From positions 62,001-126,000 of the forward strand of contig NW_026262709.1 in NCBI RefSeq assembly GCF_021869535.1: a DNA stretch of 64,000 bases, given 5' to 3'. Below, piece after piece: positions 4,085 through 59,800 of this stretch. Origin of the DNA: Mytilus californianus (taxonomy: Eukaryota). The notes beneath the pieces were generated by a model. That model saw only the letters and a program-made list of their open reading frames with translations. It did not search any database and was not told the origin of the DNA. The translations under genes were made by a program, and so were the position numbers. How positions within the stretch are numbered: position 1 is the first letter of the stretch; each line of letters opens with the position of its first letter.

Positions 4085-6205
4085 CTGAAAGAGATTCTAA
4101 ATTAAGTTCTTGTACACACATCACACATCAAAGATTCATAAAGATGCATTGCAATGCTTCATGATGTTATCTGAAAGGCCATATCAACTGTAGGGCGCGT
4201 ATATTGAAATGCTTAAGTGTGTGCTTTGTTTTCTGTACAGTCGTTTGTTTCCGACTTATGTGTTTGAATATCCCTTTGGTATCTTTCGTCTCTCTTTTAA
4301 GAAACGAGTGATGATAATTATCTACAAAACTATTAATTGGTTAAACTAGGGAAATCGCAAACTTCCTTTGCGATGACATTTAGAACAAAGGCTTTTAAAA
4401 AACGAGAACTTTCCATCTGAAATGATTCAAATATGTCACTAATTTCAATCTGTTGCTTAATGAAAATTATCTTTTGATACTACTTTTGGAAAATCAACAA
4501 TTGAACAATGCAACAAATGAGTATTTTTCATTGAAAATTATTCAGAATCAAAACGCTCAAATTCCAGGAAAGACATTAATGCGACTATCAAAATTTGACA
4601 AAACGGCAATGCAAAAAATATCATACCGCGCAAAGATGATTGCAGTCACATGAAGCGAATGCAAGTTTGTTATTGGCGAAATTGGACAAAACGTTTGAGA
4701 TCAATAATTTCTGGTGAAGATTAATGTAGCAATGTGCATCGGAAACATTAAAAATAGTCAACTATAAATGTACATTGTAACTTAACAGTTTAATACAACC
4801 TTTAACTCGAACTCACATCATTTTAACTCGAAAAAGAAGTATAATCTTAGTTTTTTTCATCAACGTTGAGTCATGTTTAACTTTTGATTTTAAACCCGAC
4901 AATCAGTTTTGAACAAGCTTATGGGATCCAAAAACAAGGCCTTGGTTCTTTTAGTTTATTTAAATCTAGAACAAAAACTATATTCTATCTCCCGAATTTT
5001 GTGTTCGCTTTTATTAGTTCCTGTTTGACTAGTGACACCTGTCGCATTTCGTATTGTAAAATGCAATTTATAGTAAATGATAAATCAATGGTTACCTTTT
5101 GTAGGTTTTATAACAAGGAAGATTCAATTCATAGAGGTATCTTTGTCTAACCTTTGACATTTCCAGATGCATAAAATATCAGAACTTTTAAATGATCTAC
5201 CATTAGAAATTACCAGAAGTTATATATAAATGCGATTTGTTTTCAGGATAGAGGACTGTGACCGATGGAAACTACAAAGACTATGAAAAATTGAAGATTA
5301 CAACGCATGGACTGAAATGGGATTGCTCTGTCGGCACAGATGTACAATTACTGTTCTACAATAGTTTCACTCGTCCTGATTCTCATAACAAGCGCACAAA
5401 TCCTATAATAAGTCGCATTTGGTAATACAATAAATATGAAAAAGGGCAGGTCTATGTCTACAATAAATTGCACATATTCGTAGATCTCTAAGAACTATTC
5501 GATAACCTTGTACAAAATCAAATCATCTAAGAGATATCTCATTGGTCCCTTGTTCGCATAACATTTGTGTAGCAGATGTAGCAGATGTAACCAGTGGTAA
5601 CCGCCAAATACAATGTCAAGTACAAGACAACTTTTAATACGGACCTCAATCGGAAACTATCATGACCTATCCGTATATCTTTGAAAGTGCACCGCTCAAA
5701 TTACGTCCAATATGTATATATAATACATATATATATATCAGACCAACAATAAACCATAAGATGATAAGCACGATTTTTGCTTATGAACCCGCAGGAAAAC
5801 CTATGTCATATTTTTCGAATTATCAAGGAAGCAAGTACAATATAATTATCAAAATATAATCCGCTTCTTTTTTTTAAACCAACCATTACTCTGTTTTGTT
5901 CATTTGAAATGCTTAGGCTGGTATTGGAATACAAACAATGTTTAATTTGTCATTGAAAAGTGTTTAAAACCCAATTCTGGAATTTGCCAAAGACTTGCCA
6001 TTTCAATGGACAAACTTTTTTGATTTGCCAGGTCGACAAGCATTGGTTTACTAAAGCAAGATTATTTGATTAAAATATAAATACGGCGATTTGTGATAAT
6101 GTTCAGTTATCATATAAATTGAAACAGTAAGGTACGTTATAAAGAAAAGGCACAGGAAACGAGGTTAAAGGAAACTCATCATATATTCCAGTATTAAAAT
6201 TATGT

Positions 6206-6249
6206 ACTTCAGACGCGCGTTTCATTTACAACAGACTCATCAGTGACGC
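6206..6249 (-). ncRNA. Minimal type I hammerhead ribozyme motif (partly decayed) in a retrozyme/PLE-terminal fragment (~6165-6310)
   Basis: Minus strand reads GCGTCA-CTGATGA-GTCT gttgt AAAT-GAAA-CGCGCG-TC-TGAAGT. The core is intact (CUGAUGA, GAAA, GUC) with a palindromic stem III; stems I and II have mismatches. Confidence 0.7.
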
Positions 6250-6342
6250 TCAAATCAAAATGTTTAAAAGGTCAAATAAAGAATGAAGTTAAAGAGCATT
6301 CAGGACCCAAACTAAAGAACAGTAGTTATGGAATATATAAAT

Positions 6343-15184: not shown

Positions 15185-16020
15185 CAGATTTCAAACAAAC
15201 TCGTTTTTGTGTGTAAATCAAATTACATAAACTGTTTGATAAATGAATTAGGTATTGACAATTCACTTGGAAACTCAACATATACCCCCACGACACGTAC
15301 CAAGGAGGAAATCCTGGATAATCATAGGTCTGTCCTATGTTCCTTTGGAACCAATGATGAAGAATCGGATTTTCCTTCACTGTATTGGATACCTAAACTA
15401 CATAAGTGTCCTTAGAAACAACATTATATTGCTGGGTCTTCCAAGTGCTCCACGAAACTCTTGCTAAATTATTAACAACAATGTTATCAGCAATCAAAGC
15501 CGAGCTTTTAAGTTATTGTGAAACTACCTATTCTAGAGGTGGCGGGAATCAGATGTGTATTCTAAAAATACCAAAGATCTTTTAGAGTAGATACAATCTA
15601 AGACTCTTTCTTCTTGAAATAGTATTAAAACATTTGACTTTTCAACACTTTACACAAGTATTTCCAAAATGCATGATCAATTGAAAGAGTTGGTCCTATT
15701 TTCTTTTATAAAAGATAATGAAGTACGTAAATACAAGTTGCTTGTATTGGGGAGGGATACTTCGTACTTTGTTAAAAATCACTTCCTTCAAATAATAAAT
15801 TCTCTGATACTGACATTATCAAAATATTTGATCTTTTGATTGACAACATATTTTTTACGTTTGGAGGACGTATTTTTCAACAAACAATCGGCATTTCCAT
15901 GGAAATCAACTGTGTTCCTTGTCGACACTTTCCTTTGTTCATTTGAGACAGGAACTTCTTGAGAAAAGAAATTAGAAAAAGAAAAGAAATGATTTCAGCT
16001 TCCCGATTGTGAACTTTCCA
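15185..16020 (+). mobile_element. Decayed Naiad-like Penelope reverse-transcriptase fragment
   Basis: NYINCLINELG...DFPSLYWIPKLHKCP*KQHYIAGSSKCSTK...MCILKNTKDL...TFDFSTLYT...IDNIF.TFGGR.FQQTIG, with stops and an internal deletion. The YWxPKxHK motif is PLE-typical. Confidence 0.8.
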
Positions 16021-16118
16021 TTACAATCACTAGGTTAATGGTTTAATGCCAATATTTGTGTAGTCTTGTCCCTGGGGATATCAACAGCCCAGTAGTAGGC
16101 ACTTTTGTTTTAAATAAA

Positions 16119-16504
16119 TTGAAAACAACAGGTTTAATAATTTCATGCGTCCGAAGCGCTTTTCTGGATTTACCTTCATCAGGAACGCTCAAAGCCAAAC
16201 ATTTGAAATCCGAGGGATGTATAAGTACCGAAACAGTTGAAAAGCTATATGACAAAAATACCTAAAATAAATAGCCAAATCCATCTAAGGTCAACTTTGC
16301 TTGAGGGAGTTGAAACCTTAGTTTCTTTATAATTTCAAAATTTATAAACGGGCAATTTTAGAAAAGGTTGTTATAAATCATGTCAATACCGAAGTACTGA
16401 CTACTGAGCTGATGATACCCTCGGGGACTGATAGTCCACCAGCAGAGGAATCGACCAAGTGATGTAAAAAATTGAAAACAACACGTTAAATAATTTCATG
16501 CGTC
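16119..16504 (-). mobile_element. HHR-containing non-autonomous retroelement (retrozyme-type): 353-nt monomer plus 33-nt terminal repeat
   Basis: Absent from the paralogous duplicate (empty site ~17961-17975). Direct repeats at 16119-16151 and 16472-16504 differ at 2 positions. Contains an HHR at 16147-16188. Confidence 0.85.
16147..16188 (-). ncRNA. Minimal type I hammerhead ribozyme, intact core
   Basis: GCGTTC-CTGATGA-AGGTAAATCCA-GAAA-AGCGCT-TC-GGACGC. Stem I has 6 bp, stem II is short, and the palindromic AAGCGCTT stem III suggests a dimeric form. Predicted cleavage is after UUC, between 16153 and 16152. Confidence 0.85.
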
Positions 16505-19500
16505 AAAATACAGTCATTTTCTGCAAAATGTTGACTAACCAGCTTTGTAATTTGTGACGAGTGTCACACTAAGGACAGGAAAGAAATTTAAACTGGTTCG
16601 TGTGGTCCGATCTTTAGGGACACATTTCAATAAGATTAAGTTCTGGTACAAAGACCACCAAACCTTTCTTGGCAACGTTTTTTCTATTTGGCGTATTTAA
16701 GGGTCTCCCACAAATTCCCTTCTCGGTTAGTTCGACATCTGTTTGGATCGGTTTTGATCGTTATTAACTTTTACCTCGAAGAAATTACGAACGTTGGTGT
16801 TTCAATACTCATAACCCAAAAGTATGTTAAATAGTCCCTCTTAAAAGTCAGAGCCTAGCCCAAAAAGTCAAAAATGTCTGGTAACATTTTCCACCGACAT
16901 AGTGAGAGCCCGATCCCTTTCTGTCGCTTTTTTTCCCCATTCCCATATGTCTTTCTTTGGGCTTTCGAACTCGTGGCATTGGCAATTAAATTGTACTGTT
17001 AATCGATGTTACAACGTTCAGTCAGCTTATTCGATTAATGAATGAACTCAAAATTAAGGATAGGCTATGTCGTATATGTCCCTTATTAGTTGTTTGATTT
17101 TTCATGACATGCCTATGTTAGGACACATAAAATGTATAACGCCTTCCGTATAAACACATCGTACGTAGGGATAACTCTAGTCAGAGTCAATCACACGAAG
17201 ACTGATACTGTATGATTCATACACTGTTTTCATTCGCAGGGGCGACGACATTTTATGGGTTGATCTTGTACCATTCGGTATGACTCATTAGGAATAGCGA
17301 TGTGTTCGTGATTTTATAGGGATAGGATTTGTGTTTGACTCAAATGGTGTGTTGTCATCTGTTACGAATAGATAACGTCAATTAGGGATTGTGGTGTCAA
17401 AGCACCATGGAATTTTCTGTTGACTTTATCACCTTATAAAACTGAAATTAACGCCATGTCTAGAGTACACAGTAAAACAACTGAAATAGTATACATGATT
17501 AAGATTGGTATGTTTTAGGTTATTTTTCAAGACCTTTCGGTATTTTGACTGTTTAACAGTACATGTCTTTAACACAACAAAGTATTATTATTGTTTTTTT
17601 TTGCCATGGCATTGTCAGTTTCTGTTCCACTTCAACTTAAAACAAAAAATTCTCTGAAACTGACATTATCAAAATGTTCGATCTTTTGATTGACAACATA
17701 TTTTTTACTTTTGGAGGACGTGTTTTTCAACAAACAATCGACATTTTCATGGAAACCAACTGTGTTCCTTGTCGATTTATTCCTTTATTCATATGAGACA
17801 AGAACTTCTTGAGAAAATACATTAGAAAAAGAAAAGAAATGATTTCAGCTGCCCAATTGTAAACTGTCCATTACAATCACTAGGTTAATGGTTTAATGCC
17901 AATATTTGTGTAGTCTTGTCTCCGGGGATATCAACAGCCTAGTAGTAGGCACTTCTGTTTTTAATAAAATACAGTCATTTTCTGCAAAATGTTGATTAAC
18001 CAACTTTGTAATTTGTGACGAGTGTCACACTAAGGACAGGAAAGAAATTTAAACTGGTTCATGTGGTCCGATCGTTAGGGACACAGAATAATAAGATAAG
18101 ATGCAGTTCTGGTACAAAGCCACCAATCCTTCCTTGGCAACGTTTTTCCATTTGGCGTATTTTAGGGTCTCCTACAAATTCCCTTCTCGGTTAGTTCGAC
18201 ATCTGTTTGGATAGGTTTTGATCGTTGCTAACTTTTTCTTCGCAGAAATAACCAACGTTGATGCTGCAGTACACATAACCCCAAAGTATGTTAAATAGTC
18301 CCTCCTCGTAAAATTCAGAGCCTAGCTCAAAAAGTCAAAAATGTCTGATAACATTTTCCAACGACACAGTGAGAGACCGATCCCTTTCTATTGCTTTTGC
18401 TTCCAATTCCCATATGTCGATTCTTTGAGATTTTGAACTCGTGGCATTGGCAATTGAATTGTACTGTAAATCGATGTAACAACGTTCAGTCGGCTTATTC
18501 GATTAATAAATGAACTCAAAATTAAGGATAGGCTATGTTGTATACGTCCTTTATCAGCTGTTTGATTTGTCATGACATGCCCATGTTTGGATACATAAAA
18601 TGTATAACGTTTTCTGTATAAACACATTGTACGCAGGGATAACTCTAGTCAGAGTCAATCACACGAGGACTGATACTGTGTGATTCATACACTGTTTTCA
18701 ATTCGCAGGGGTGACGACATTATGGGTTGATTCTATACCATTCGGTATAACTAATTAGGAATGGTGATGTCTTCGTGATTTTATACGGATAGGATTTGTG
18801 TTTGACTCAAATGGTGTGTTGTCATCTGTTAAGAATAGATAACGTCAATTAGGGATTGTGGTGTCAATCAGTCCCCTTCGAAAAAAGCACCATGGAATTT
18901 TCTGTTGACTTTATTACCTTATCAAACTGAAATTAACACCATGTCTAGGGTACACAATAAAACACCCGAAATAGTATACATGATTAAGATTGATATGTTT
19001 TAGGTTATGTTTCAAGACCTTTCGGTATTTTGACTGTTTAACAGTACATGTCTTTAACACAACAAAGTATTATTATTGTTTTTTTTGCCATGGCATTGTC
19101 AGTTTCTGTTCCACTTATAAGTTTGAATATCCCTTTGGTATCTTTCGACTCTCTTTTGTCATGTTTGTTATAATATATATTTTCCCTGCATCCATTAAAC
19201 CTGTTTAATGTTTTGTCAAGGATTATAAACTCCTCTTTCTTGACATCGTGTTGATGATGTTTGAAATCAGGAAAAACCAGGGTGAACTTCCTCTACCACT
19301 TTTCCACATTTATTAATTGCCCAAGCTGGTCGATAATCCGTTTCTACTAATCTTAAGTTTTCGTTATAAAAAATGTTATATTTGTAAATTACAAGTTCAG
19401 TTGAACCAACATATATCAACTACGATAGTTGTTTTTACAAAGAGAAAGAGGCTTTCGTTTTATGTATATAAGTGGAACACATTACGGATGTATTAAGGTC

Positions 19501-20543: not shown

Positions 20544-21412
20544 TTGTTAGAGTTGTAGGTGTTTATACTTTTGCATGTTTTGTTTCTCTTTATTTTGCCG
20601 CCCCCTCCCCCCCCCCCCCCCCAAACAAAATTTAAAAACAACACAAATGAAACAAAGGAAATATACAAAATATGATAACAAACCAATAATTGGAAAAAAA
20701 ATTCACTGTGATTTTTTGTTTTTTTTATTTATACAAAAAATATGTTTGGAGCTAAAACAAAAATGGTTCAATTAATGATGTTGAAAAAAATATCATTGGC
20801 CTTCAATGGGAAAATGTCACACGACCTATAACTAAATGGTGACTCATCGTTCGATATGTCAACAATGTTGCTGAGGAGATTTTCCAAATAGCTCAACGAA
20901 ATTCTTGTCACGGAATAAAACGGAAAAAAATAGTGGAAAAAGGCATTTTACAAACTTGTTTGCAAGAAAAGGAAAAACTAACCTTTTTCTTTTTCGTATT
21001 GGTAAATTTATGTATGACTTCACGATTTAAATGGATATTCCCCAGTGTCACGAACTTGTCAGCATAACGAACTTGTAAGCAAGTGAACAATTTATCAGTG
21101 ATGTTTCTTATCTTATTTTGACAAATTTTAACCAAATTGGCTGCTTAAGGCGAATTTTTATTTAACTTTATCACTTTCGTTAAAGATTGAACAAAAAAAA
21201 TCATCTTTTACTTTTTGTATATCTCGTAGCTAATATGTTTTTCAATATTGATCATGTATAAATGATCAGTTCTCAGACAGATGCAATAGTTATAAATGGA
21301 CAATTTGATTGTATTTTAATCACTGGTTAAAAATGTATTATATCATCATTTTTATTTAGCTTCTAACGTGTGTACGTATTTATAGATCCCAGGCTTTCAT
21401 ATCCTTAAGTTT

Positions 21413-21455
21413 GAGCGTTCCTGAAAAAGGTTAATCAAGAAAACACTTCCGACGC
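21413..21455 (+). ncRNA. Degenerate copy of the retrozyme HHR (core mutated)
   Basis: GAGCGTTC-CTGAAAA-AGGTTAATCAA-GAAA-ACACT-TC-CGACGC; CUGAUGA has become CUGAAAA, so it is probably inactive. Confidence 0.6.
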
Positions 21456-21684
21456 ACCAAATTTCTTACGTGCTTTACCATTTTGTAAATTTTTGATGAG
21501 GTGATATATCATTACCAAAATTAATTAATTAACAACTTTAAAACAAAAAGTATCTGCATATACGATAGAATATTGATTTTCATAAACAATGTACTTTTTT
21601 TTTAAAGAATAAAACAAATTATTAGATAAATCAAAATTCTAGTTTAAAGCCTACTTTGCAAATATTTCTTTTATTTGCTTAATA

Positions 21685-25640: not shown

Positions 25641-25682
<42 letters not shown>
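25641..25682. repeat. (TA)n microsatellite flanking PLE 1
   Basis: About 21 TA units. Other (TA)n tracts at 27570-27601 and 30896-30953. Confidence 0.98.
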
Positions 25683-25684
<2 letters not shown>

Positions 25685-26096
25685 TGCCTATAAATAGCAG
25701 CACATGACATACAAATCTATGGGAGTGTGGATTAATCAGTACAGAGATTAATTCAATTACACAAATAAAATTATAGATTGCCTAACAATGTAATTTTAAC
25801 ACACTATTTAGTATGTAAATATAAGAATGTTTAAAATATTTACAAAATGATGAAAATAAACGCAATATTTCGCTAGACTAACTAGCTTTATCAAGCGTGC
25901 ATCTATCCAGGTGAAATCGGATGTAGATGATAAGAAACTTTTGCAGCTCAATGTATATGTTGCACTTGAATTTAGCTGCCTTGAAAATAATACATAATTT
26001 GGATGAAGTTCAAGATTTTTACAAAATTGGTAGTTGAAGTTAGCAACGTCCATTGGCCAATATTACAGGATAAAAAGGACGATGCTGTGTACTAAA

Positions 26097-26873
26097 TTAT
26101 TCTTTATCTTTCCTGTATCTTTTCTCATCTTTTTCGTTAAGACCATCAGGTTCTAAAGTGTGGAGTTGGTGGATCCAAAAATTTTCTCTTCTCCTTCTCG
26201 CCGTGGTGTCCCACTCGGTGTTGACTTCTATGATTTGGAAGGTAACATTATCAAAAGAATGTTTCGTTGAACGAAGATGTCTTGTGAGAGGACAGTTTTT
26301 GTTGGTTTTGTACCATGAACGATGGTTATTGAGCCGAATATTAAATTTGTCCATTGTTTCTCCCACATACTGAATGCCACATGTGTCACATGTTAATATA
26401 TAAATTGAGTTCTCCGTTTTACAGTTGGAATTTGAGTAGATGGTATAATTTTGTTTAGTAACGGAGCTGATGAAAGAACTGCTTGTATTGGCAGCTTTAC
26501 AACACAAGCAGTTCCTTCGACCACATTGTTTGTAGCAACCGGGAGATGGAGTAGGCTGCTTTGCTAATACAGATGTCACTAATTTGTCACGGATGTTTTT
26601 AGGTCTTCTGAAGGCCATGACTGGTGGTGAGGAAAATACTTTTTTAAGATTTGAATCATTTTCTATAATTTTCCAATGCTTCTGAACAATGGAAGACACA
26701 TTTTTAAAATCAGGATGGTAAGTGAGTACAAGGGGTGTTCTGTTAGCTGCTTTATTCTTATCTTTGTACTCTAGAAGTTCTTGGCGACTAGTTTTGTTTG
26801 CTCTTTCGAAAGCGCTATCAATGATGTTGTTATTGTATCCTCGAACAACTAGATGTTTACGTAGTTGTCTTTC
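26097..26873 (-). CDS. PLE 1: RT C-terminus plus GIY-YIG endonuclease (5'-truncated)
   Basis: ORF track 26097-26894; bases above ~26873 belong to the inverted arm. Confidence 0.9.
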   Translation of the reverse strand, partial: ERQLRKHLVVRGYNNNIIDSAFERANKTSRQELLEYKDKNKAANRTPLVLTYHPDFKNVSSIVQKHWKIIENDSNLKKVFSSPPVMAFRRPKNIRDKLVTSVLAKQPTPSPGCYKQCGRRNCLCCKAANTSSSFISSVTKQNYTIYSNSNCKTENSIYILTCDTCGIQYVGETMDKFNIRLNNHRSWYKTNKNCPLTRHLRSTKHSFDNVTFQIIEVNTEWDTTARRRRENFWIHQLHTLEPDGLNEKDEKRYRKDKE

Positions 26874-27248
26874 ATCAGCTCCGTTACTAAACAAAATTAT
26901 ACCATCTACTCAAATTCCAACTGTAAAACGGAGAACTCAATTTATATATTAACATGTGACACATGTGGCATTCAGTATGTGGGAGAAACAATGGACAAAT
27001 TTAATATTCGGCTCAATAACCATCGTTCATGGTACAAAACCAACAAAAACTGTCCTCTCACAAGACATCTTCGTTCAACGAAACATTCTTTTGATAATGT
27101 TACCTTCCAAATCATAGAAGTCAACACCGAGTGGGACACCACGGCGAGAAGGAGAAGAGAAAATTTTTGGATCCACCAACTCCACACTTTAGAACCTGAT
27201 GATCTTAACGAAAAAGATGAGAAAAGATACAGGAAAGATAAAGAATAA
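26868..27248 (+). CDS. PLE 1: inverted duplicate of the GIY-YIG domain
   Basis: ORF 26865-27248 is identical to the minus-strand copy except LEPDD vs LEPDG. Confidence 0.9.
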   Translation, partial: SFISSVTKQNYTIYSNSNCKTENSIYILTCDTCGIQYVGETMDKFNIRLNNHRSWYKTNKNCPLTRHLRSTKHSFDNVTFQIIEVNTEWDTTARRRRENFWIHQLHTLEPDDLNEKDEKRYRKDKE

Positions 27249-27446
27249 TTTAGTACACAGCATCGTCCTTTTTATCCTGTAATATTGGCCAATGGACGTT
27301 GCTAACTTCAACTACCAATTTTGTAAAAATCTTGAACTTCATCCAAATTATGTATTATTTTCAAGGCAGCTAAATTCAAGTGCAACATATACATTGAGCT
27401 GCAAAAGTTTCTTATCATCTACATCCGATTTCACCTGGATAGATGC

Positions 27447-27485
27447 ACGCTTGATAAAGCTAGTTAGTCTAGCGAAATATTGCGT
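27447..27485 (+). ncRNA. PLE 1 terminal hammerhead motif with U3-A8 core variant (mirror copy at 25860-25898, minus strand)
   Basis: ACGC-TTGATAA-A-GCTAG ttagt CTAGC-GAAA-TAT-T-GCGT: 4-bp stem I, perfect 5-bp stem II, palindromic AATATT stem III, AUU triplet. Confidence 0.7.
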
Positions 27486-27567
27486 TTATTTTCATCATTT
27501 TGTAAATATTTTAAACATTCTTATATTTACATACTAAATAGTGTGTTAAAATTACATTGTTAGGCAA

Positions 27568-27603
<36 letters not shown>

Positions 27604-27883
27604 TCTAGAGATTTGCACAACGATACTAATATAAGATGGTATTATACGAAGATGTTGTTAATAAATCGTGTTGACAAATATTTCGGCTTAACAAATAGCC
27701 TTCTTCGGTGTCAATTATTTTAACAATACTGATAATATGTATAAAAATAGCTCAATAATACAGGTAAGTTTTGGTCTATTGATTTAATCCAAAATCCTGA
27801 ACATCATAATATTAAACAAAACTCAATACTCATATATACGTGACTGTGTATATTTACAACCCAAAATGAGTGAAAAATAAAAC

Positions 27884-28189
27884 TTAGTATTTTTTATTGA
27901 TGCCGTTTGGATGATGTACATTTAGTTCCTTTATCCAAAAGCTTTCCCGAACCTGTCGCTGGGCATCACTCCAGTGAATGTTCTGTTCAATCACTAGGAT
28001 CTTCATGCGGTTAAAGTCATCAAGTGTGTGACCAGACTGTCTGAAATGCTGAGAAACTGGGAGAATTGGCTTCTTAGAGATATCACTCCTATGGCCATTG
28101 AGGCGTTTGTGGAAAGGCTGCTTTGACTCACCAACATATTGGAGGCCACAAACCGAACATTCTAGAATGTAAATAACATTCATACTTTT
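27884..28189 (-). CDS. PLE 2: inverted duplicate of the GIY-YIG domain
   Basis: ORF track 27884-28183 matches the C-terminus of 30018-30521 (one L/I difference). Confidence 0.9.
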   Translation of the reverse strand, partial: KSMNVIYILECSVCGLQYVGESKQPFHKRLNGHRSDISKKPILPVSQHFRQSGHTLDDFNRMKILVIEQNIHWSDAQRQVRESFWIKELNVHHPNGINKKY

Positions 28190-28191
28190 AA

Positions 28192-30521
28192 AGAAAATTC
28201 CGTAGGGATGGCATCGAACATATCAATCCTTCTTTACCATCTGAAAAAAAGAGAAAACGAGTAAGACGCTTTAAACGTAGGTCACTAGAGACTGATTCGC
28301 CCTCCAACATTGTGGTCAATCTTTCCAAACACCAGTTAACGGAAGCTGAAACATCTCTTCTCTCGAGAGGCTTAAATTTCGGTCCTTTACCTGCCCCTCT
28401 CAATGAAACTAAATTGTCGGAAGACCTTGACAATTTTGCCAGAAGTCTACGCATTAAGGAATATTTCGCGTCGAAGGAGAACAACAACAGATGCTCGGAT
28501 AGCGACTCAGAAATTTCAGAAGACGAAAACAACTACAATTTTATAAAAAAGAGTACTTGGATCCCTAAACCGAGCAAAAATGCCACCTTGGAATCATTTA
28601 TTGACAATTTTAAGTCGGACATTATTAGAAATACTAGAAATAACAATAAACCTTTTGACAATCTTACCAATGAAGAACGAACTGCACTGAAAAACTTACG
28701 ATCTAACGACAATATCGTCATTAAACCTGCAGACAAAGGCAGTGCAGTGGTTGTCATGGATAAATCTGCCTATATTCAAGAGGCTGAACGACAACTTGGC
28801 GATGCAAGGTTCTACCAAAAACTAGACTCTGATCCTACAACATCGTTTAGCAGAGAAATAACTGATAGTTTGGTAGAAATGCACAACGATGGTTTCATCG
28901 ATGAAAAGACTCTAGAATATTTGAAACCAGAAAATCCAAAACCGGGCAGATTTTATCTTTTACCTAAAATTCATAAGGCCAATAACCCAGGAAGACCTAT
29001 AGTTTCAGCGAACGGTCATCCGACGGAAAAAATATCGGAATTCGTTGACTTCCATCTTCGTCAACATGTTGAGGACTTACCATCTCACATCAAAGATACT
29101 ACCGATTATCTTAGAAAATTGCAGGCCTTAAATCCACTCCCCTCCGACACGACACTTGTCTCTATGGACGTCACCTCCCTCTACACAAATATTCCACATG
29201 CAGATGGCATTGATGCATGTAAAGAAGTTTTGAATTCCCGACCAGTGAAATATCCACCTACTGAATGCCTGGTCAAAATGCTCACGCTGGTACTCAAAAA
29301 CAACAACTTCACTTTTGATGGAGACCATTATCTGCAAGTTAATGGAACTGCTATGGGCACCAAAATGGCTCCATCATATGCCAACATATTTATGGGCAAA
29401 TTAGAAAAACAACTCCTTGAATCTTCCATTGAAAAACCGCTTTCCTGGTTTAGATTTATAGATGATGTGGATATGAAATGGAATAAAAGTGACGAGGATT
29501 TAGATACATTCATCACTCATGCCAACAACATACATCCAAGTATCAAATTTACTCATGAGAAATCTAAATCCAAAATCACCTTCCTCGATACCTCCAGCTC
29601 GCTCACAGATGGCATCATATCCACTGATCTATATTCTAAGCCTACTGACACTCACCAATATCTGTCCCCTAAAAGTTGCCATCCTGCTCATTGTACTAAG
29701 AGCATCCCGTACAGTCAGGCACTCAGAGTCAAGCGAATATGTTCCAACTCAGAAACAACTAAAAAACAACTACGTCAACTCGAAACCAGCTTGAAGAGAA
29801 GGGGCTACAAACACAAAACTATACAAAAAGGCTTTCAGAAAGCGGAAACTATTCCAAGGAGTAAACTGTTAGAATACAAATATAAAAAGAAAATAAAAGG
29901 ACTCCATGTGTTCTTACTTACCACCCATCTCTCAAAAACAGCTTCGGTGTCATTCGTGAGCATTGGAAAACAGTTGAAAAGAATTCCAAACTATCCAAGA
30001 TTTTTCCCGAGCCTCCCATGATAGCTTTTAGGCAACCCAATAGTCTGCGTAACCTGCTGGTGCGGGCTGAAGTGTCTGATAATACAAGTACGTCTGAAGA
30101 ATGTCGTTCGTGTGATGAAAAACGCAGCAAATGCTGCCTACAGATGCATCACTCATCAACTTTTCACAGTAAGGCAACCGAAAATAACTATAAGATATTT
30201 TGCAATGCTAACTGCAAAAGTATGAATGTTATTTACATTCTAGAATGTTCGGTTTGTGGCCTCCAATATGTTGGTGAGTCAAAGCAGCCTTTCCACAAAC
30301 GCCTCAATGGCCATAGGAGTGATATCTCTAAGAAGCCACTTCTCCCAGTTTCTCAGCATTTCAGACAGTCTGGTCACACACTTGATGACTTTAACCGCAT
30401 GAAGATCCTAGTGATTGAACAGAACATTCACTGGAGTGATGCCCAGCGACAGGTTCGGGAAAGCTTTTGGATAAAGGAACTAAATGTACATCATCCAAAC
30501 GGCATCAATAAAAAATACTAA
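28192..30521 (+). CDS. PLE 2 polyprotein: reverse transcriptase plus GIY-YIG endonuclease, one -1 frameshift at ~29884-29898
   Basis: RT motifs FYLLPKIHK..PGRPIVS, MDVTSLYTNI, GTAMGTKMAPSYAN, WFRFIDD, FLD. After the A-run the shifted frame reads RTPCVLTYHP...PPMIAFRQP..L (homologous to PLE 1), then CRSC..CC and VIYILECSVCGLQYVGES. The frame is open from 28192 with no ATG (truncated). Confidence 0.93.
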
Positions 30522-30690
30522 GTTTAATTTTTCACTCATTTTGGGTTGTAAATATACACAGTCACGTATATTTGAGTATTGAGTTTTGTTTTATATTATG
30601 ATGTTCAGGATTTTGGATTAAATCAATAGACCAAAACTTACCTGTATTATTGAGCTATTTTTATACATATTATCAGTATTGTTAAAATAA

Positions 30691-30734
30691 TTGACACCGA
30701 AGAAGGCTATTTGTTAAGCCGAAATATTTGTCAA
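30691..30734 (+). ncRNA. PLE 2 terminal hammerhead motif with C4 variant (mirror copy at 27671-27714, minus strand)
   Basis: TTGACA-CCGAAGA-A-GGCT atttgtta AGCC-GAAA-TAT-T-TGTCAA: perfect 6-bp stem I, 4-bp stem II, palindromic AATATT stem III. Confidence 0.7.
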
Positions 30735-30892
30735 CACGATTTATTAACAACATCTTCGTATGATACCATCTTATATTAGTATCGTTGTGCAAATCTCTAG
30801 ACTTATATAATTTTTTTCCTTATCTGCACAGTATCGTCTATTCTAGACGATCCGGTACATATTAAATTTGCTGGTTGGTCCTTTTTATAGAC

Positions 30893-30958
<66 letters not shown>

Positions 30959-43493: not shown

Positions 43494-45556
43494 TGAGCGA
43501 TACATATACATAACAATATACATGTATATATATATACAAAATTGTACTTATACAACAATTAGCCATATTTATATATATAGGTTGTTGTGACCTATTTGTA
43601 AGAAACTACAGAACTTTATATGCAGATGTAGATATCTATTTTATACATATAAGATAATTCTTTAATAACCAACTATAGACTTACTCTAATAAAAAAAAAT
43701 TAAAGTAAGTTAGCTAAATGTATACTAAACAGAATTGATCAATTTTCTTTTTTCTCTTTTGTTTAAATACATGTACATGTATAACCTTTTTCTTTATCAT
43801 ATTTTCACAGATACCATTAAGTTGATACCAAATTGTAAGTATAGAACGGGGAATTTTATTCCAGGTTTATTTTCTATTTATGCAAATATTTTATTTTTGT
43901 TTTTTTGTTTTATTTTTGTTGGTTTCTTTTTTGCTTTTTATTGCTTTAATTTTGCTTGCTCTCTATGCTTTTTTGCCTGATTGTCTGCGATATATTGGCA
44001 TATACATATAAATGTAAATGCTAATTCTGCTTTATATATATATATATTCAGTTTCCAATCTGCTGTGTTGAAATTTTTGCCTTTATAATTTATTTATATG
44101 TTTATTTTCTGCTGCTTATATACTTATTTATAATTTTGCTCTTGCTAGTTATTTAGTATTATTCTGAACTGCTGTGCTTAATGCTATTGCTATATGTTTT
44201 ACTTTAACTCATCAGATACAGACTGACACAAATGAGTTGAAGTTAGAATATGTAAAGTATAGACCACTTTTAAAGTGATGTTTATTCCAAATTTCAGAAT
44301 GAGATGCTTGTTTGAAATTATCTTTTCTTGTTGTGTTTATGGTACATGTACATTAAAATGAAGTGACCATACTATAATAAGTTTTGCACAATCTCTGCTG
44401 AAACTAACTCATTAATATGATATGCATACACACACTCATGATGTGTAGTCTGTGTTCGATTGGTAGATAGTTTTGTTAGTTTTTATGATATATTGATCAT
44501 GCATTAATTTGATTTACATTGTGATGCAAAAGTATTGCTTTTTATCAAGAGTGATACTTCATTTGAAGTCGGTCAGTGTTCTTAATTTTTTGAAATTGTA
44601 TGTCTCTCAAGTACGCATTGTTCTTTTAAAGGAGAAATATTAACGTTTAGATAAATCTTATATATTTACAGCTACATCTCATAAAAAATATTGATCTTTG
44701 ATCGTATCAGAGATATAATGAGTATAAAACATCTCTGCCTTCTTAAATAGACAAAGGATCATATAAATTTGTAAATTTGACATGGGAGTTTTTAATACAT
44801 ATATACAAAGGACAAACATACAAATTCCAATATCTACATGTAGTAAATTGAACAACTCTGACAGTCTTGAAATATTGTACATAAAAGGCTTATTTATATT
44901 ATATATAGTTCATTTAACTTAAATTGTTTTTCAAAAAGAATGAACGTATTAGACAGACAAAATCTTATTATAAAAATATTGACAAATCTGACTGGATCAG
45001 ATTTGAAGGCAAAACAATGGACATTTGTATACTTGTGCTTCTTGTGTGATCTTTTCTTTTTTGCCATAACCACATAGAATGGAAAAAATGTCTTTGTGTG
45101 TTGGAAAGAATGTCAGTAAGGAAATTAAATGTATTATGAAATTATAGGAATGAAATAATCTTTCAAAATATGTACATAACATGAACTATACAGATATTCA
45201 CTGTTGGGTTTGCTCAAATTAAATTTCCATCTGAATCCAATGTATTTATTAAAATTTCTTCTGAGTTATCTCCCTTAGACCATTTGGAGTGAATATCCTA
45301 CACAACAACAGTGAATGTCTCAGAGTGCAGATTTAATATTTGATTTTAATGTTGGACTTTGTCTTGCTATTGTATTTTATGTTTACATATATATGCATTT
45401 ATTGTAAATTACAAATATGTCTTAAGGTGTCACAGATCTTGAAAAATTATACAGTTTTAAAGGAAAAGAATTCTAATAGTCCCTTGATTTCACAAATATC
45501 ATGGTATATTCATGTATACTCACTTAGAGTTATAAATATTGATAAAGCTAAACACA

Positions 45557-48500: not shown

Positions 48501-49344
48501 CTATAAAAACTGGGCAAACGCTGGAATTTGGACAGTGCATGATTTGTTAGATTATCAGGGCAAAGTTATGTCATTTCAAAATTTCCAACAATTATATCAA
48601 TTTAGGCCAAATATTTTACATTATTATGGAATAGCACACTCGCTTAATGAGTGGTTAAACACGATCAATATTGAAGTAAAGGAGAAAAAAATTCAAGCAA
48701 TACTACCTTTTAACATAAGTATCTTCTTTGAATCAAAAAAAGGTTCAAAGGACATGTACAAAATATTGAATGAGAAATATATTACTTTTGCTGCAAAGGA
48801 AAAATGGGAGAACCATCTTAATATGACTGGTATTAACTGGAAAAAAATACACACTTCGTGTACAAAATATACTAGAAGCACTAAGCTTTGCTGGTTCCAA
48901 TATAGAATTATACATAGAATTTTAGGAACTAATTCACTACTTTACAAGATGAAAATAAATAGTAGCAACATATGTACATTTTGCAAAGAAGGACAAGAGA
49001 CCATAGAACATGTATTTTGGAGCTGTCCGATGGTCGCCAGTCTCTGGCATGCACTAAACATCTGGATTTTTGAAATGACAAATATTGAACTGCCTTTGAA
49101 TATAATGATTATTCTATTTGGTATCTACGAAAATGTTAAATTGAATTTTGTTAAAAATAAGATTATTTTGCTTTCAAAATACTATATTTACCGAACAAAA
49201 TTACAAGAAGTTTTGCTAAATTTAAATGCTTTAAAAAACTATTTAAAGGAACACTTGAACTTAGAAAAATACATTTCATTTAAAAACCTCTCTGTAGATG
49301 AATATAACAAATACTGGAGTCCCTGGACCCCTATTATAGAATAA
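45557..49344 (+). CDS. LINE ORF2 (APE endonuclease, RT, C-terminal Zn finger), L1/Tx1 clade; two +1 frameshifts in A-runs
   Basis: APE motifs SYNCQGL, CLQDTH, NIYGPN, GDFN, RLDFF, SDHSP; RT motifs KSPGSDG, NWRPITLLN, DFEKAFDS, GCRQGDPLSP, SQYADD, FKLLG; zf CTFC..ETIEHVFWSC. Frameshifts at A8 46357-46364 and A9 46527-46535; no stop codons once these are corrected. Confidence 0.95.
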
Positions 49345-56428: not shown

Positions 56429-56759
56429 ATATAGCGCTCTTAAGATGTGATATTAAACGCATACATCCTCTTGTATCCGCTAATTTTTCATTCTAAGAAA
56501 AACTACTGTCAAGACATTTCAATCCACCTACTCTCCCTTTTTTAAAACAAGTTATTGCTGATTTAGTTTATTTTCAGTTTTTTAAGGTGAAATAGATCAC
56601 AATGGTACCTAAAGTACCGTGTATATCGTTTGGTATCATCATCAATATCAGAAGCCTCGACATTTATCGACAGATACAATGAATAACGAAATTATAATGT
56701 GCACAAAATGTTATTCCAGGAAAAAAATTTAAAAAAAACAACATATGAATTTTTTTTTT

Positions 56760-56801
56760 GCGTCCGAAGCTCCTTTCTGGATTTATCTTCATCAGGAACA
56801 C
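56760..56801 (-). ncRNA. Type I hammerhead motif of the same family as 16147-16188 (isolated fragment)
   Basis: GTGTTC-CTGATGA-AGATAAATCCA-GAAA-GGAGCT-TC-GGACGC. The core is intact, but the stem III palindrome and stem II are weakened. Confidence 0.7.
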
Positions 56802-59800
56802 GTGCAAGATAAATATTTAGAATTTAACAACGCATAAGTACAGAAACACGCGAAACAAAAGTATGTTTTCCGTCATGACATTCATTTTTTAAAGGGAAGT
56901 TCACTTCATTATCAAAATCAAAATAATTTATTTGGCAGTGATTTATTAAAATGCACAGAATGTGGTATGATTGCCAATGCGACAACTGTTCACCAACATT
57001 CAAATGAAGTGAATGTAAGCAATTATAGACAACCGTACGGCCTTCAACAATGAAAATAAATACCGTATAGTCGGCTGTGAAAGGCCCTGACATGAAAACT
57101 TTGAAACAATTCAACTGCGAAAACTTACTGCCTAATTTATAACAAAGCAATCTACGAAAAACAATTATACCAACATGAACCAACAATAACCATTTGACTA
57201 TCGGCTCCTGCCTTGAGACAGGCACATAATGAATGTGGTTGGGGTAAACATTTTTGCCGGCGCCAAACCCTCCCCCTCACCTTACCTGTGACAGTGATGT
57301 AATAGTAAAACATAAGAACAAACTATAAAAATCAGTTGAATAAGGTTTAACTCATCAGATCGATACAAAGCAACAAAACAACTAACTAAAACACAGACTG
57401 GGCATGGAAGGGAATTTATAAATCCCTCACAACAAAAAAAGACACAAAAAAAGTACAGATCTGAGAGTACTTGCAGTAACTAACAGCTAGTTTAAAGCCA
57501 ACAATAACTAATACAAAAATCATGCATCTAAGACAAAAAAATATAAATAAGTACACATCCAACATCTAATGTATTTAATGATAAGACGTCATTTACAGTC
57601 AGAAATACACGACCTTGTGCATATTCGTAGAGGTGGTATGTATCTGCCAAGCATAATTGGATTTAATTTAATCAATACACGAAACAGTATATTTTGTTGA
57701 TCATTTTCCCAGGAAAGTAAGTTATGCATGTGGAGACAAAGTGATCAGTTGGTCAGTCGAGAGGATTCGTAAGGGGGATATCTAGATTTATAATGATATA
57801 TACATTGTTATCTGTCAGCTTCTTGCTATTTCAAAACTATGTAAATCGGTTTTTTTTTCCAAATTTTCCTATTTATAATTTGAAAAAAAAAAATAATATA
57901 TGTATTTTTTAATAGATTTCATAGTTTAACACTCTCCCCAAAAGAATGTAATATTGAAACATCATTACCATCTTCAAAATCAACTGTTGGACAATTACGT
58001 TTTTTGTTTATACTTGTAGATGTATTCAATGATCCTTTCAAGGCCTAGGGCATCCATATATTTAATTTAGTAGTTTGTTTTCTAACAAGAATAATTCGTT
58101 TATGCTGATGGTTTGTTGACCATAAACTTTTACCTGAAAAATGAGCAATCATGACACAATTGTGTTGCATTGTCCTTTTTTTATAAAGGCACCTATTTAT
58201 CAAAATATATTCTCCAAATTATCATAATTACACACTCAGAACTATATAATGTCATATGTTACCAGTGATACATAGATAACTTTCATTGAAACCAATTCAA
58301 TAACGTTGCTACAGATACGAGCATAGTGAACGAGTTGGGATATATAAATACCGTCAAATATTTGTACAAGTTTTCGCCTTGTGAAACTGAAGTATATGAA
58401 TCTAAAGGATATTTATTGCAGCTTATATTTAAGTCATTTAAAATACGTTCCTTTGGGTAAATCGTGTAAAAGTCGGCAGTATAGTTGCTTAGTAACCCTT
58501 TTCATTATAGAAGATCGCTTTATTTGAGTGACTGCAAATAAATTTGGACTCGGTTTTGTCAAATAACCAAGCAATTAAATAGGAAAACTTGTGTTTGATT
58601 GTGTTGAAGTGTTTAAAGGATCGAAAAAACAAAACTCTCAATCGTATTAAAAGGATCATCGAAAGCAGTTAATCTATTTTAAACATCAAAAGAAAATTTT
58701 ACTCTCCAAAAATAAAATTTTCATATGCTTTATTATAAATAAGATTTTTAAATGAAGTTCGGGAAGTAGTTAAAAGCACTAAAATGCTCGTTGTGGAACA
58801 CTGGCTAGAGACCAAAATGAAACGATATTTCAATTATTTTTTGTATAGTTTAGGAAACCAATACATAAGTAAAAACTTCCAATGTTTAGAGAATCGAGGC
58901 CTTAGACAGTTTTTAACCTCATGGTTTTCAATGATATTGAGGTCCCATGTTAAAACTCGGCCATAGGAATCACATCTAAAATTTGATGATTCTCAGTCTC
59001 AATTTGAAGGATCATTACGTTCTATACTGACGTCAGATGCATCTGATGTGTTATTAAAAATAAAACTTCTACTGGGTTTTCAGCTACTTACTCTGTCTAT
59101 TACTGTCACAAATAAAGACAGTATGATAATTAGAAAAACACGAGGTTGCAAATTTGAGATCATCTGAAACAGAAATTTGTAGATCATTATATTATCGGAT
59201 ATTCTTTTTATTGAATGCTGTATATGAATATAATGTCTTTAATCGGAGCATTTAAAAAAATATGCAATGTTACAGCTCATGTTGCATTCTATACATAAAC
59301 TCATCATAGATACACATAGATTATATAATAAATTTGACCAAAAATTCACTGACACACCTTTGCAAACAATTGGAAATATTTATTTATCTTCTGCGACACC
59401 AACCTATATCGTTCTCTTTTATGATTCCATAAAAACGATGACACCACCGTTAATTTCGAAAATCTGAAAATAATAAGTATTAGGAAAACCCATTCCATCA
59501 CTTTTTTCTGTACGGTACATGTTACAATAATTCCTCTCTGGTAGCAAGTGTTGCGCTTCAAGTCTCGAATTATAGATTATAGGTGCTGAATTGTATATAT
59601 TTTTATTTACTTTATAGTTGTCCGTTTATTTGTCGTTGTGCTATTATGTTAATTTTGGTCTTATGACTGGATACTAGAAAATTCCAAAGATCTTTTCCCT
59701 ATATACAATCTAAAATTCATCTTGCAAGAGTATTAAATTTTACTTTTCTACTCTTTACACAATAATGACCAAGTGACACAAATCTAAAAGACAAATGGAA

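What the first reader, a model, noticed from the sequence alone, without database searches (positions are those of the whole stretch)
16119..16504. Filled/empty-site pair maps a retrozyme's 5' end to its own hammerhead cleavage site
Seen: copy 1 of the tandem duplication has 386 bp that copy 2 lacks (copy 2: ttaatAAAAtacagtc; copy 1: taaatAAA[insert]AAAAtacagtc). On the minus strand the insert starts GACGCATGAAAT..., runs exactly 353 nt to an intact type I HHR, and ends 33 nt past the cleavage site with a repeat of its own start. Self-cleavage after UUC (16153|16152) would release an RNA starting GGACGC, so the genomic 5' end is 1 nt short of that point. Known: small non-autonomous HHR retroelements (retrozymes) with tandem monomers and circular RNAs have been described in metazoans, including mussels. 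Inference: this is a single retrotransposition of a self-cleaved monomer, either a circle copied slightly more than once or a linear RNA. The built-in empty-site control shows at most an AAA-sized TSD at an A-rich target, and the event is younger than the duplication.
Basis: partly seen in the sequence, partly recalled or inferred. Interest (0 to 1): 0.8.

Follow-up and report, generated by a model that had tools for sequence, protein, structure and literature searches.

The report
Mussel retrozyme insertion; 5' end coincidental
This is a genuine, cleanly bounded insertion of a small non-coding mussel "retrozyme" (a jumping element carrying a hammerhead self-cutting RNA motif), but a genome-wide census shows that its start next to the ribozyme's cutting site is most likely chance, so it is an ordinary copy of a known kind of element.

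Summary
Copy 1 of a 1.46-kb tandem duplication carries a 386-bp insert (16119-16504, minus strand) that copy 2 lacks, with at most a TTT target duplication. The insert is one 353-nt monomer plus a 33-39 nt repeat of its own start. It carries a hammerhead-like motif and begins 1 nt after the predicted cleavage site.

It belongs to a very abundant family in this Mytilus genome: 2,107 exact copies of its ribozyme 30-mer. The family is homologous to the published Mg353 mussel retrozyme but has a variant, non-canonical hammerhead that Rfam does not detect.

The headline interpretation is not supported. Across the family the 3' end is fixed in a U-run 39-41 nt past the cleavage site, while 5' ends vary. 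Among about 76 other copies whose 5' ends lie within about 40 nt of the site, 2-3 start at the three positions around it, against 3 expected. The insert also crosses the junction once, so a self-cleaved linear monomer cannot be the sole template.

The best reading is ordinary target-primed reverse transcription of a circular or multimeric RNA, probably by a Penelope-like enzyme.

One residual hint remains: very short copies cluster 0-8 nt upstream of the site.

This scan has already described similar retrozyme families elsewhere in this genome.

The parts
16119..16504 (-). The inserted retrozyme copy, 386 bp. It reaches 389-392 bp if the ambiguous T-run 16113-16118 is counted, which makes 1.09-1.11 monomers.
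   Evidence: Filled versus empty site alignment. It is 97.4% identical to the family consensus over 392 nt.
16152..16504 (-). One full 353-nt monomer. Monomer phase p = 16505 - window position. Phase 353 (G at 16152) is the first nucleotide of the predicted 3' cleavage product.
   Evidence: Arrays with 352-353 bp period in the genome; consensus of 72 monomers.
16147..16188 (-). Variant type I hammerhead motif. Helix I pairs 16188-16183 with 16152-16147. CUGAUGA is at 16182-16176. Helix II and its loop span 16175-16165, with an A.A at 10.1/11.1. GAA is at 16164-16162. Helix III and its GCGC loop span 16161-16154. C17 is 16153, and the predicted cut is 16153|16152.
   Evidence: Sequence reading. 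It is identical to the family consensus, and the 30-mer has 2,107 exact copies in the genome. There is no Rfam hit, and cleavage has not been shown.
16119..16151 (-). Terminal redundancy: a second copy of phases 1-33 (the 'tail' past the ribozyme). It differs from the 5' copy at 2 of 33 positions, and each copy has one private change relative to the consensus.
16113..16118 (-). 3' junction inside the element's U-run (phases 34-39). TTT is shared with the target, giving a TSD of at most 3 bp. The family's canonical 3' end lies here.
   Evidence: In other copies, 43 of 69 3' ends fall at phases 39-41 and 60 of 69 at phases 33-45. There are 382 such 3' ends with an exact 23-mer.
17962..17971 (-). 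Empty target site in duplicate copy 2 (...gtaTTTT|ATTaa...). The insertion point lies between 17966 and 17965.
15786..19086 (.). Host tandem duplication (about 1.46-kb unit, two copies, 91.9% identical) that provides the filled/empty comparison.
56735..56848 (-). Separate, decayed, 5'-truncated copy of a related retrozyme (74% to phases 270-383). It also ends in a T-run.
21376..21463 (+). Separate fragment, 78% similar to phases 277-366 (the ribozyme region).

Best explanation
This is an ordinary insertion of an Mg353-like, non-LTR (animal-type) retrozyme.

Inferred mechanism. A circular or head-to-tail multimeric retrozyme RNA was copied by target-primed reverse transcription. A nick at a T/A-rich site supplied the primer. 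cDNA synthesis began in the element's U-run, 34-40 nt downstream of the hammerhead site, as it does in almost every copy of the family. Synthesis crossed the intact ribozyme junction, went once round the 353-nt unit and stopped where it happened to stop. The product was joined with a TSD of at most 3 bp. The enzyme is probably that of a Penelope-like element.

The start 1 nt from the cleavage site is a coincidence of variable 5' termination, not a footprint of self-cleavage.

Shown: the insertion and its exact borders, the fixed 3' end, the variable 5' ends, the absence of a spike at the site, and family RNA with head-to-tail continuity.

Inferred: target priming, circularity of the template, and the identity of the reverse transcriptase.
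For: - Filled/empty pair with no remnant in the empty site.
- In 69 distinct copies from fetched loci, the 3' end is at phases 39-41 in 43 and at phases 33-45 in 60. The 5' ends range over the whole monomer, and lengths run from 37 nt to more than 1,600 nt, up to 4.7 units.
- Pattern census of long copies (176 hits, read by eye): about 76 true 5' ends in phases 315-353 and 1-37, roughly 1 per position. At phases 353/1/2 there are 2 sure cases (C99:115965781 and C46:39433124) and 1 ambiguous case, against 3.0 expected. The 95% upper limit is about 8.
- 5' ends do have hot spots, at phases 47-59, 319-320, 329-330 and 337-341, but the cleavage site is not one of them.
- TSDs are mostly absent. 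Junction-anchored repeats of 5 bp or more occur in 20% of copies versus 4.7% in shuffled pairs. There is no poly(A).
- RNA-seq from four runs covers the element but not its flanks. It shows 'goes back 347-353' joints, meaning head-to-tail RNA, and no pile-up of molecule ends at 16152/16153.
- Published model and relatives: PMC7229834 and PMC7761336 (circRNA template giving cDNA of more than one unit); PMC8557442 (Penelope elements show 5' truncation, partial tandems and a 30-40 bp tail); 10.64898/2026.07.22.740005 (retrozymes as non-autonomous PLE derivatives).
Against: - For one copy taken alone, a start within 1 nt of the site has a chance of only about 1%.
- Very short copies, 24-64 nt long and ending at the canonical 3' end, do cluster near the site. 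14 of 27 have 5' ends at phases 345-353 (p about 0.0006), with a mode at 350.
- 5' borders were read by eye from 80-letter tool rows and carry a few nt of microhomology ambiguity.
- No Penelope-like partner sharing the 3' end was found. The two PLEs in this window are unrelated in sequence.
- Circularity of the template is not shown.
Confidence: 0.65

Rival explanations
1. The 5' end was set by hammerhead self-cleavage. Reverse transcription ran off a 5' end created by the ribozyme, either on a linear RNA of two or more units that was cleaved at its first ribozyme only, or on a circle that cleaved itself while being copied. The result is exactly one unit plus the tail.
For: - The insert starts 1 nt after the predicted cut.
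- A few other copies start at phases 353, 1 or 2: C99:115965781, C46:39433124, L054, a 37-nt mini-copy in L051, C88:89710199 and C132:111295182. L010 joins them if its TTATTC is read as a TSD.
- Short copies cluster around the site.
Against: - There is no excess at the site among about 76 long-copy 5' ends: 2-3 observed versus 3.0 expected.
- Most members of the short-copy cluster keep 1-8 nt from the 5' side of the cut (TTC, TC, GCTTC...). A cleaved end cannot supply these.
- The insert itself contains an intact junction, so a linear monomer is excluded as sole template.
- Cleavage by this variant ribozyme is untested, and RNA-seq shows no molecule ends piling up at the site.
Confidence: 0.15
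2. Structure-induced stop. The folded hammerhead, in particular the palindromic AAGCGCUU of helix III, which can pair between two units, acts as a roadblock for the reverse transcriptase on an uncleaved template. cDNAs then tend to end within a few nt of the catalytic site, and this copy is one such stop on the second pass.
For: Short copies show 7-8 of 27 5' ends at phases 350-352 and 14 of 27 at phases 345-353, but only 3-4 at phases 1-16. A weak helix III acting through dimers is known for animal type I hammerheads (PMC7761336, citing Forster 1988 and Lunse 2017).
Against: On the second pass, the class to which this copy belongs, the zone 345-353 is only about 1.2 times the local background. 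This copy stops before the helix III nucleotides, not after them. The sample is small and was read by eye.
Confidence: 0.15
3. No insertion took place in copy 1. Instead the element predates the duplication and was precisely lost from copy 2, or the difference is an assembly artefact.
For: None specific. It is only that polarity cannot be proven without an outgroup.
Against: - The empty site holds no remnant, and a deletion between the 33-bp repeats would leave one repeat.
- The borders coincide with the family's canonical 3' end.
- The element is less diverged from its consensus (2.6%) than the duplicates are from each other (8.1%).
Confidence: 0.03

Closest known systems
Metazoan non-LTR retrozymes, specifically the Mytilus galloprovincialis 'Mg353' retrozyme (Cervera and de la Pena 2020, PMC7229834)
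   Same: Same 353-bp unit length, low GC (37.7%) and no ORF. Both form head-to-tail arrays plus dispersed copies in the thousands and are expressed as RNA. Sequence blocks at phases about 44-108, and the helix I/core region, are shared with the cloned Mg353 sequence printed in that paper's supplement (compared by eye).
   Different: The ribozyme differs. Mg353 has GUC...GAC for helix II and C-G in helix III. This family has (A)GG...CC(A) and A-U. Those are compensatory changes in helices I, II (2 of 3 pairs) and III, plus an A.A at 10.1/11.1. It is not recognised by Rfam. The published counts (2,880 + 1,681 motifs, HHR A and B) appear to match the canonical type, which has 4,152 exact matches here. 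This variant type has 2,107. Its cleavage has not been tested.
Penelope-like elements (PLEs) and their non-autonomous derivatives (PMC8557442; 10.64898/2026.07.22.740005)
   Same: Fixed 3' end without poly(A), heavy 5' truncation, partial head-to-tail tandems that mimic terminal repeats, a 30-40 nt extension ('tail') at one end, variable or absent TSD, and a hammerhead in the repeated part.
   Different: No coding capacity. No sequence similarity to the two PLEs in this window. In the plus-strand PLE, the hammerhead-like motif I read by eye (not checked with a tool) lies about 165 nt from the 3' end, not about 40. This copy did not land in a (TA)n tract. No partner was identified.
SINE/LINE-type target-primed reverse transcription with 5' truncation
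   Same: Fixed 3' end, variable 5' end, a T/A-rich nick site, and microhomology at the junctions.
   Different: No A-tail or simple-repeat tail. Copies longer than one unit, up to 4.7 units and in arrays, imply a circular or multimeric template.
Plant LTR retrozymes (PMC4918200)
   Same: Non-autonomous, hammerhead-bearing elements with circular RNA intermediates.
   Different: Plant elements have type III hammerheads inside real ~350-bp LTRs, a PBS, a PPT and 4-bp TSDs. None of these is present here.

Membership tests
Metazoan non-LTR retrozyme | Each unit carries a type I hammerhead ribozyme | tested here: inconclusive
   All core nucleotides, helix I (6 bp) and a short helix III are present, and the motif is identical to the family consensus. 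Helix II has only 2 pairs plus an A.A mismatch. There is no Rfam hit. Activity is untested.
Metazoan non-LTR retrozyme | Short (150-450 bp) non-coding unit of low GC, found as head-to-tail repeats dispersed through the genome | tested here: met
   The unit is 353 bp with 37.7% GC, and the longest stop-free stretch is 78 codons. Arrays with 352-353 bp spacing and many solo copies occur. The first-look search gave 3,171 candidates.
Metazoan non-LTR retrozyme | No LTR, PBS or PPT; TSD variable or absent | tested here: met
   The 'terminal repeat' is only the 33-39 nt overlap of 1.1 units. Most copies have no TSD.
Metazoan non-LTR retrozyme | Expressed as monomeric circular RNA | tested here: inconclusive
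   Family RNA is present in 4 RNA runs with head-to-tail joints of 347-353 nt and no ends at the cut site. Circles and multimers cannot be told apart with these data.
Metazoan non-LTR retrozyme | Homology to a described member (Mg353) | tested here: met
   Shared blocks and the same unit length, compared by eye with the supplement text.
Non-autonomous derivative of a Penelope-like element | Sequence similarity of the unit to the pseudo-LTR or 3' end of an autonomous PLE in the same genome | tested here: not met
   No similarity to the two PLEs in this window.
Non-autonomous derivative of a Penelope-like element | PLE-type insertion anatomy: fixed 3' end, 5' truncation, partial tandems, 30-40 bp tail | tested here: met
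Rfam Hammerhead_1 (type I) | Score at or above the family's gathering threshold | tested here: not met
   No match at gathering score in the whole window, and none at E<=10 in 15500-17000.
SINE mobilised by a poly(A)-dependent LINE | 3' A-tail or simple-repeat tail | tested here: not met
   The element ends ...CAATTTTTT(A) and then runs directly into unique flank.

The most novel reading that the evidence does not exclude
The copies of this family may preserve genomic footprints of how retrozyme RNA is reverse-transcribed. Three features would fit that idea. First, initiation is fixed in a U-run 39-40 nt 3' of the ribozyme site. Second, there is a first-pass stop zone at the ribozyme junction (phases 345-353). 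Third, there is a 5'-end hot spot at phases about 47-59, some 14 nt short of a full turn, as expected if a rolling-circle reverse transcriptase collides with its own start. On this reading the templates are circles, and the window's copy could be a run-off on a circle that reopened at the ribozyme during copying.
Probability: 0.15. Interest if true: 0.6.

Novelty: new member of a known kind. Interest (0 to 1): 0.3.

Why it matters
How animal retrozymes are mobilised is still a model without mapped junctions; the published reviews say the repeats show no motif that points to the helper element.

A filled/empty pair gives exact borders for one event: no A-tail, a TSD of at most 3 bp, and a 3' junction in a U-run. 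The family census adds a fixed start of reverse transcription about 40 nt past the ribozyme and variable 5' ends. That is the anatomy expected of Penelope-type target priming on a circular or multimeric RNA.

The attractive claim that the genome records the ribozyme's own cut does not survive the census, so this copy should not be cited as such evidence.

A side result is an abundant hammerhead variant (2,107 exact copies) that standard motif models miss.

Tried and rejected
- Rfam scans at gathering score and at E<=10 gave nothing.
- Tandem Repeats Finder on 10-24 kb gave nothing. The duplication is too long and the insert is only 1.09 units.
I therefore read 5' borders by eye from the 80-letter rows of the pattern searches.
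- A short 98-nt query gave only 56 candidates, because very common words are skipped. It returned mostly divergent subfamilies.
- The apparent 5' ends at '304' are an artefact of the tool's 50-nt scoring margin. I discarded them.
- Covariation in the ribozyme could not be tested. The motif is invariant across subfamilies and only slightly better conserved than the body in divergent copies: 89.5% versus 87.3%.
- The monomer fold is not unusually stable (z = -0.59), nor is the isolated ribozyme (z = -0.81).
- No similarity was found between the retrozyme and the two Penelope elements at 25.6-31 kb.
- RNA-seq showed no molecule ends at the cut site. It therefore gives no support for cleavage. It is also no proof against cleavage if circles dominate.
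- Single-position count patterns were considered and dropped, because each would yield only 1-2 hits.

Full report
**1. The observation.** A repeat search of the window shows a two-copy tandem duplication, about 15786-17601 and 17636-19086. Its register shifts from a spacing of 1850 bp to 1461-1468 bp across the finding. Aligning the two copies on the minus strand places a clean gap of 386 bp in copy 2.

The filled site reads ...gactgtaTTTT, then the insert from GACGC to TTTTCAA, then TTTattt... The empty site reads ...gactgtaTTTTattaaaaac.... Prefix and suffix overlap by TTT only, so the target duplication is 0-3 bp. The empty site contains no retrozyme remnant, which rules out a deletion between the insert's 33-bp end repeats. 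The duplicates are 91.9% identical. The insert differs from its family consensus at 10 of 392 positions, so the insertion is the younger event.

**2. The element.** I use monomer phases p = 16505 minus window position. The insert is one 353-nt unit (16152-16504) followed by a second copy of phases 1-33, or 1-39 if the T-run is counted. The two copies of the redundant stretch differ at 2 of 33 positions, each by a private change from the consensus. That pattern fits mutation after insertion.

The hammerhead motif lies at 16147-16188, and its layout is given under "parts". The predicted cut is 16153|16152, so the product would start GGACGC.

The motif is not canonical. Position 10.1/11.1 is A.A, helix II has only two G-C pairs, and Rfam finds nothing in the window at gathering score or at E<=10 around the site.

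**3. Relation to the published mussel element.** The supplement of PMC7229834 prints a cloned M. galloprovincialis genomic unit, Mg353. It has the same length. By eye it shares the blocks at phases about 44-108 and the helix I/core region. Its ribozyme is canonical, however: GUC...GAC, and GAAAC-GCGC-GUC.

Relative to it, the present motif keeps pairing through changes on both sides in helix I, in two of three helix II pairs and in helix III. That argues for descent under structural constraint, but it does not show activity. In this genome the canonical type has 4,152 exact matches and the present variant has 2,107. The variant is identical across subfamilies, so there is no covariation to test within the family.

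**4. Family anatomy.** The own-genome search gave 3,171 first-look candidates. The consensus 33-mer of phases 1-33 occurs exactly 1,077 times.

In 69 distinct copies from the fetched loci, the 3' end lies at phases 39-41 in 43 and at phases 33-45 in 60. It always ends ...CAATTTTTT(A) and then runs into unique flank. The 5' ends fall all over the unit, and lengths run from 37 nt to more than 1,600 nt. A pattern count finds 382 such 3' ends with an exact 23-mer.

Junction-anchored direct repeats of 5 bp or more occur in 20% of copies, against 4.7% of shuffled flank pairs. Most copies have none. There is no A-tail.

A fixed 3' end, variable 5' ends and copies longer than one unit are what target-primed reverse transcription of a circular or multimeric RNA would give. 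Published descriptions of Penelope-like insertions list the same traits: 5' truncation, partial tandems and a 30-40 bp tail (PMC8557442). The window's copy fits this anatomy. Its 3' junction lies in the U-run, 3-6 nt short of the modal end, or at the modal end if T37A is a later mutation.

**5. Testing the headline claim.** Each pattern demanded non-consensus letters upstream of a window of N and an exact anchor downstream. I read the borders from the printed rows by eye.

For copies that reach phases 58-81, there were 176 hits. After removing indel-shifted and internally deleted copies, about 76 distinct true 5' ends (besides this one) lie in phases 315-353 and 1-37, roughly one per position.

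- At phases 353, 1 and 2 there are two sure cases (C99:115965781 and C46:39433124) and one ambiguous case.
- The expectation for those three positions is 3.0, and the 95% upper limit is about 8.
- The eight positions on either side of the cut hold similar numbers.

With a few thousand insertions in the genome, one or two dozen copies should start within 1 nt of the cut by chance.

**6. A residual signal.** A second pattern selected very short copies that end at the canonical 3' end, with total length 24-64 nt. Of 27 such events, 14 have 5' ends at phases 345-353 (binomial p about 0.0006). The mode is 350 (four or five cases), and only 3-4 lie at phases 1-16.

Most of these copies, though, retain 1-8 nt from the 5' side of the cut (TTC, TC, GCTTC, AGCGCTTC). 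The template was therefore continuous there. A block by the folded ribozyme, perhaps through the palindromic AAGCGCUU, explains this better than run-off on a cleaved end. A jump onto another cleaved molecule's 3' end cannot be excluded. On the second pass, the class of the window's copy, the zone is only about 1.2 times the background.

**7. Another hot spot.** A third pattern covering phases 21-82 gave about 49 events, 12-14 of them at phases 50-59 and a mode at 54. In the first census, 40 rows had borders in phases 38-57, against 76 in the other 76 positions (p about 0.0005).

Phase 54 is about 14 nt short of a complete turn from the start at phase 39/40. One reading is that a rolling-circle enzyme collides with its own start. 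A sequence- or structure-specific pause is equally possible. I record this as unexplained.

**8. RNA.** Four public RNA runs were laid on 15900-16700. Their reads cover 16116-16500 and none covers the flanks beyond 16520 or 16035-16088, so the reads come from the family and not from this locus. In three runs first mates lie mainly on the + strand, which in most stranded libraries means RNA of the element's sense strand.

Joints that 'go back' 347-353 nt are seen in all four runs, showing head-to-tail continuity of the RNA. No pile-up of molecule starts or ends is reported at 16152/16153. This agrees with the published dominance of circles over linear forms in mussel (PMC7229834). It proves neither circularity nor cleavage for this variant.

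**9. What the template can and cannot have been.** The insert contains one intact junction (16153|16152) and stops at the second encounter. A self-cleaved linear monomer cannot supply that unless the enzyme switched templates. Three templates remain:

- a circle;
- an uncleaved multimer;
- a linear RNA of two or more units that was cleaved only at its 5' end.

**10. Helper element.** The scan's earlier notes pointed to two Penelope-like elements at 25.6-31 kb in this window. They share no detectable similarity with the retrozyme. In the plus-strand one, a hammerhead-like motif that I read by eye, and did not check with a tool, sits about 165 nt from the 3' end, which abuts a (TA)n tract. The helper therefore remains unidentified, and the Penelope assignment rests on insertion anatomy and on the literature (10.64898/2026.07.22.740005; PMC7229834).

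**11. Verdict.** The element is a new member, with a variant ribozyme, of a known kind. The claim that its 5' end marks its own cleavage site is most likely coincidence. Follow-up agents of this scan have already described other retrozyme families with Penelope-type insertion scars elsewhere in this genome.

Noticed in passing
window 16147-16188 (-) and genome-wide: The ribozyme of this family is a non-canonical hammerhead: A.A at 10.1/11.1 and A-U pairs in helix III. Its 30-mer has 2,107 exact copies, against 4,152 for the canonical Mg353-type motif. Rfam does not detect it, and it was probably not counted in the published mussel survey.
   Followed up: partly
genome-wide copies, monomer phases 47-59 (equivalent to window 16446-16458): There is a hot spot of 5' ends with a mode at phase 54, about 14 nt short of one full turn from the fixed 3' start. 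It could mark a rolling-circle enzyme meeting its own start, or a simple pause site.
   Followed up: partly
genome-wide, e.g. G000:C88:89710199, C46:33806762, C13:9846480, and the 37-nt copy in L051: Many 'tail-only' mini-insertions of 40-60 nt exist, consisting of little more than the stretch between the ribozyme site and the 3' end. Their 5' ends cluster at phases 345-353.
   Followed up: partly
window 16386-16439: RNA-seq depth is 5-20 times higher on this 50-nt block (phases 66-119), with hundreds of reads diverging on both sides. The block is shared with a much more highly expressed relative, probably Mg353-type retrozymes.
   Followed up: no
window 15981-16034: A roughly 50-nt piece of the host duplication is covered by RNA reads (about 30-50x) that run on into unrelated sequence on both sides. 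It is part of some other expressed repeat.
   Followed up: no
window about 6200-6255 (-): An Mg353-type hammerhead motif (CUGAUGAGUC...GAAACGCGCGUC) with a decayed helix II. This is a fragment of the canonical retrozyme family.
   Followed up: no
window 21376-21463 (+) and 56735-56848 (-): Two further decayed fragments related to the ribozyme/3' part of this retrozyme. The second ends in a T-run, like the family's canonical 3' end.
   Followed up: partly
window 25641-30953: Two Penelope-like elements sit back to back in a (TA)n tract (ORFs 26097-26894 on the minus strand and 28312-30021 on the plus strand). They share no sequence similarity with the retrozyme studied here.
   Followed up: partly
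window 45539-49344 (+): Two long ORFs of 289 and 984 aa, overlapping end to start. I did not examine them.
   Followed up: no
G000:C2:6140511 / 6148768; C99:1228645 / 1244541; C88:64798185 / 64800479 / 64802766: Identical retrozyme 5' junctions recur a few kb apart, once in inverted orientation. Segmental duplications carried the copies, so such rows must be counted once in any census.
   Followed up: no
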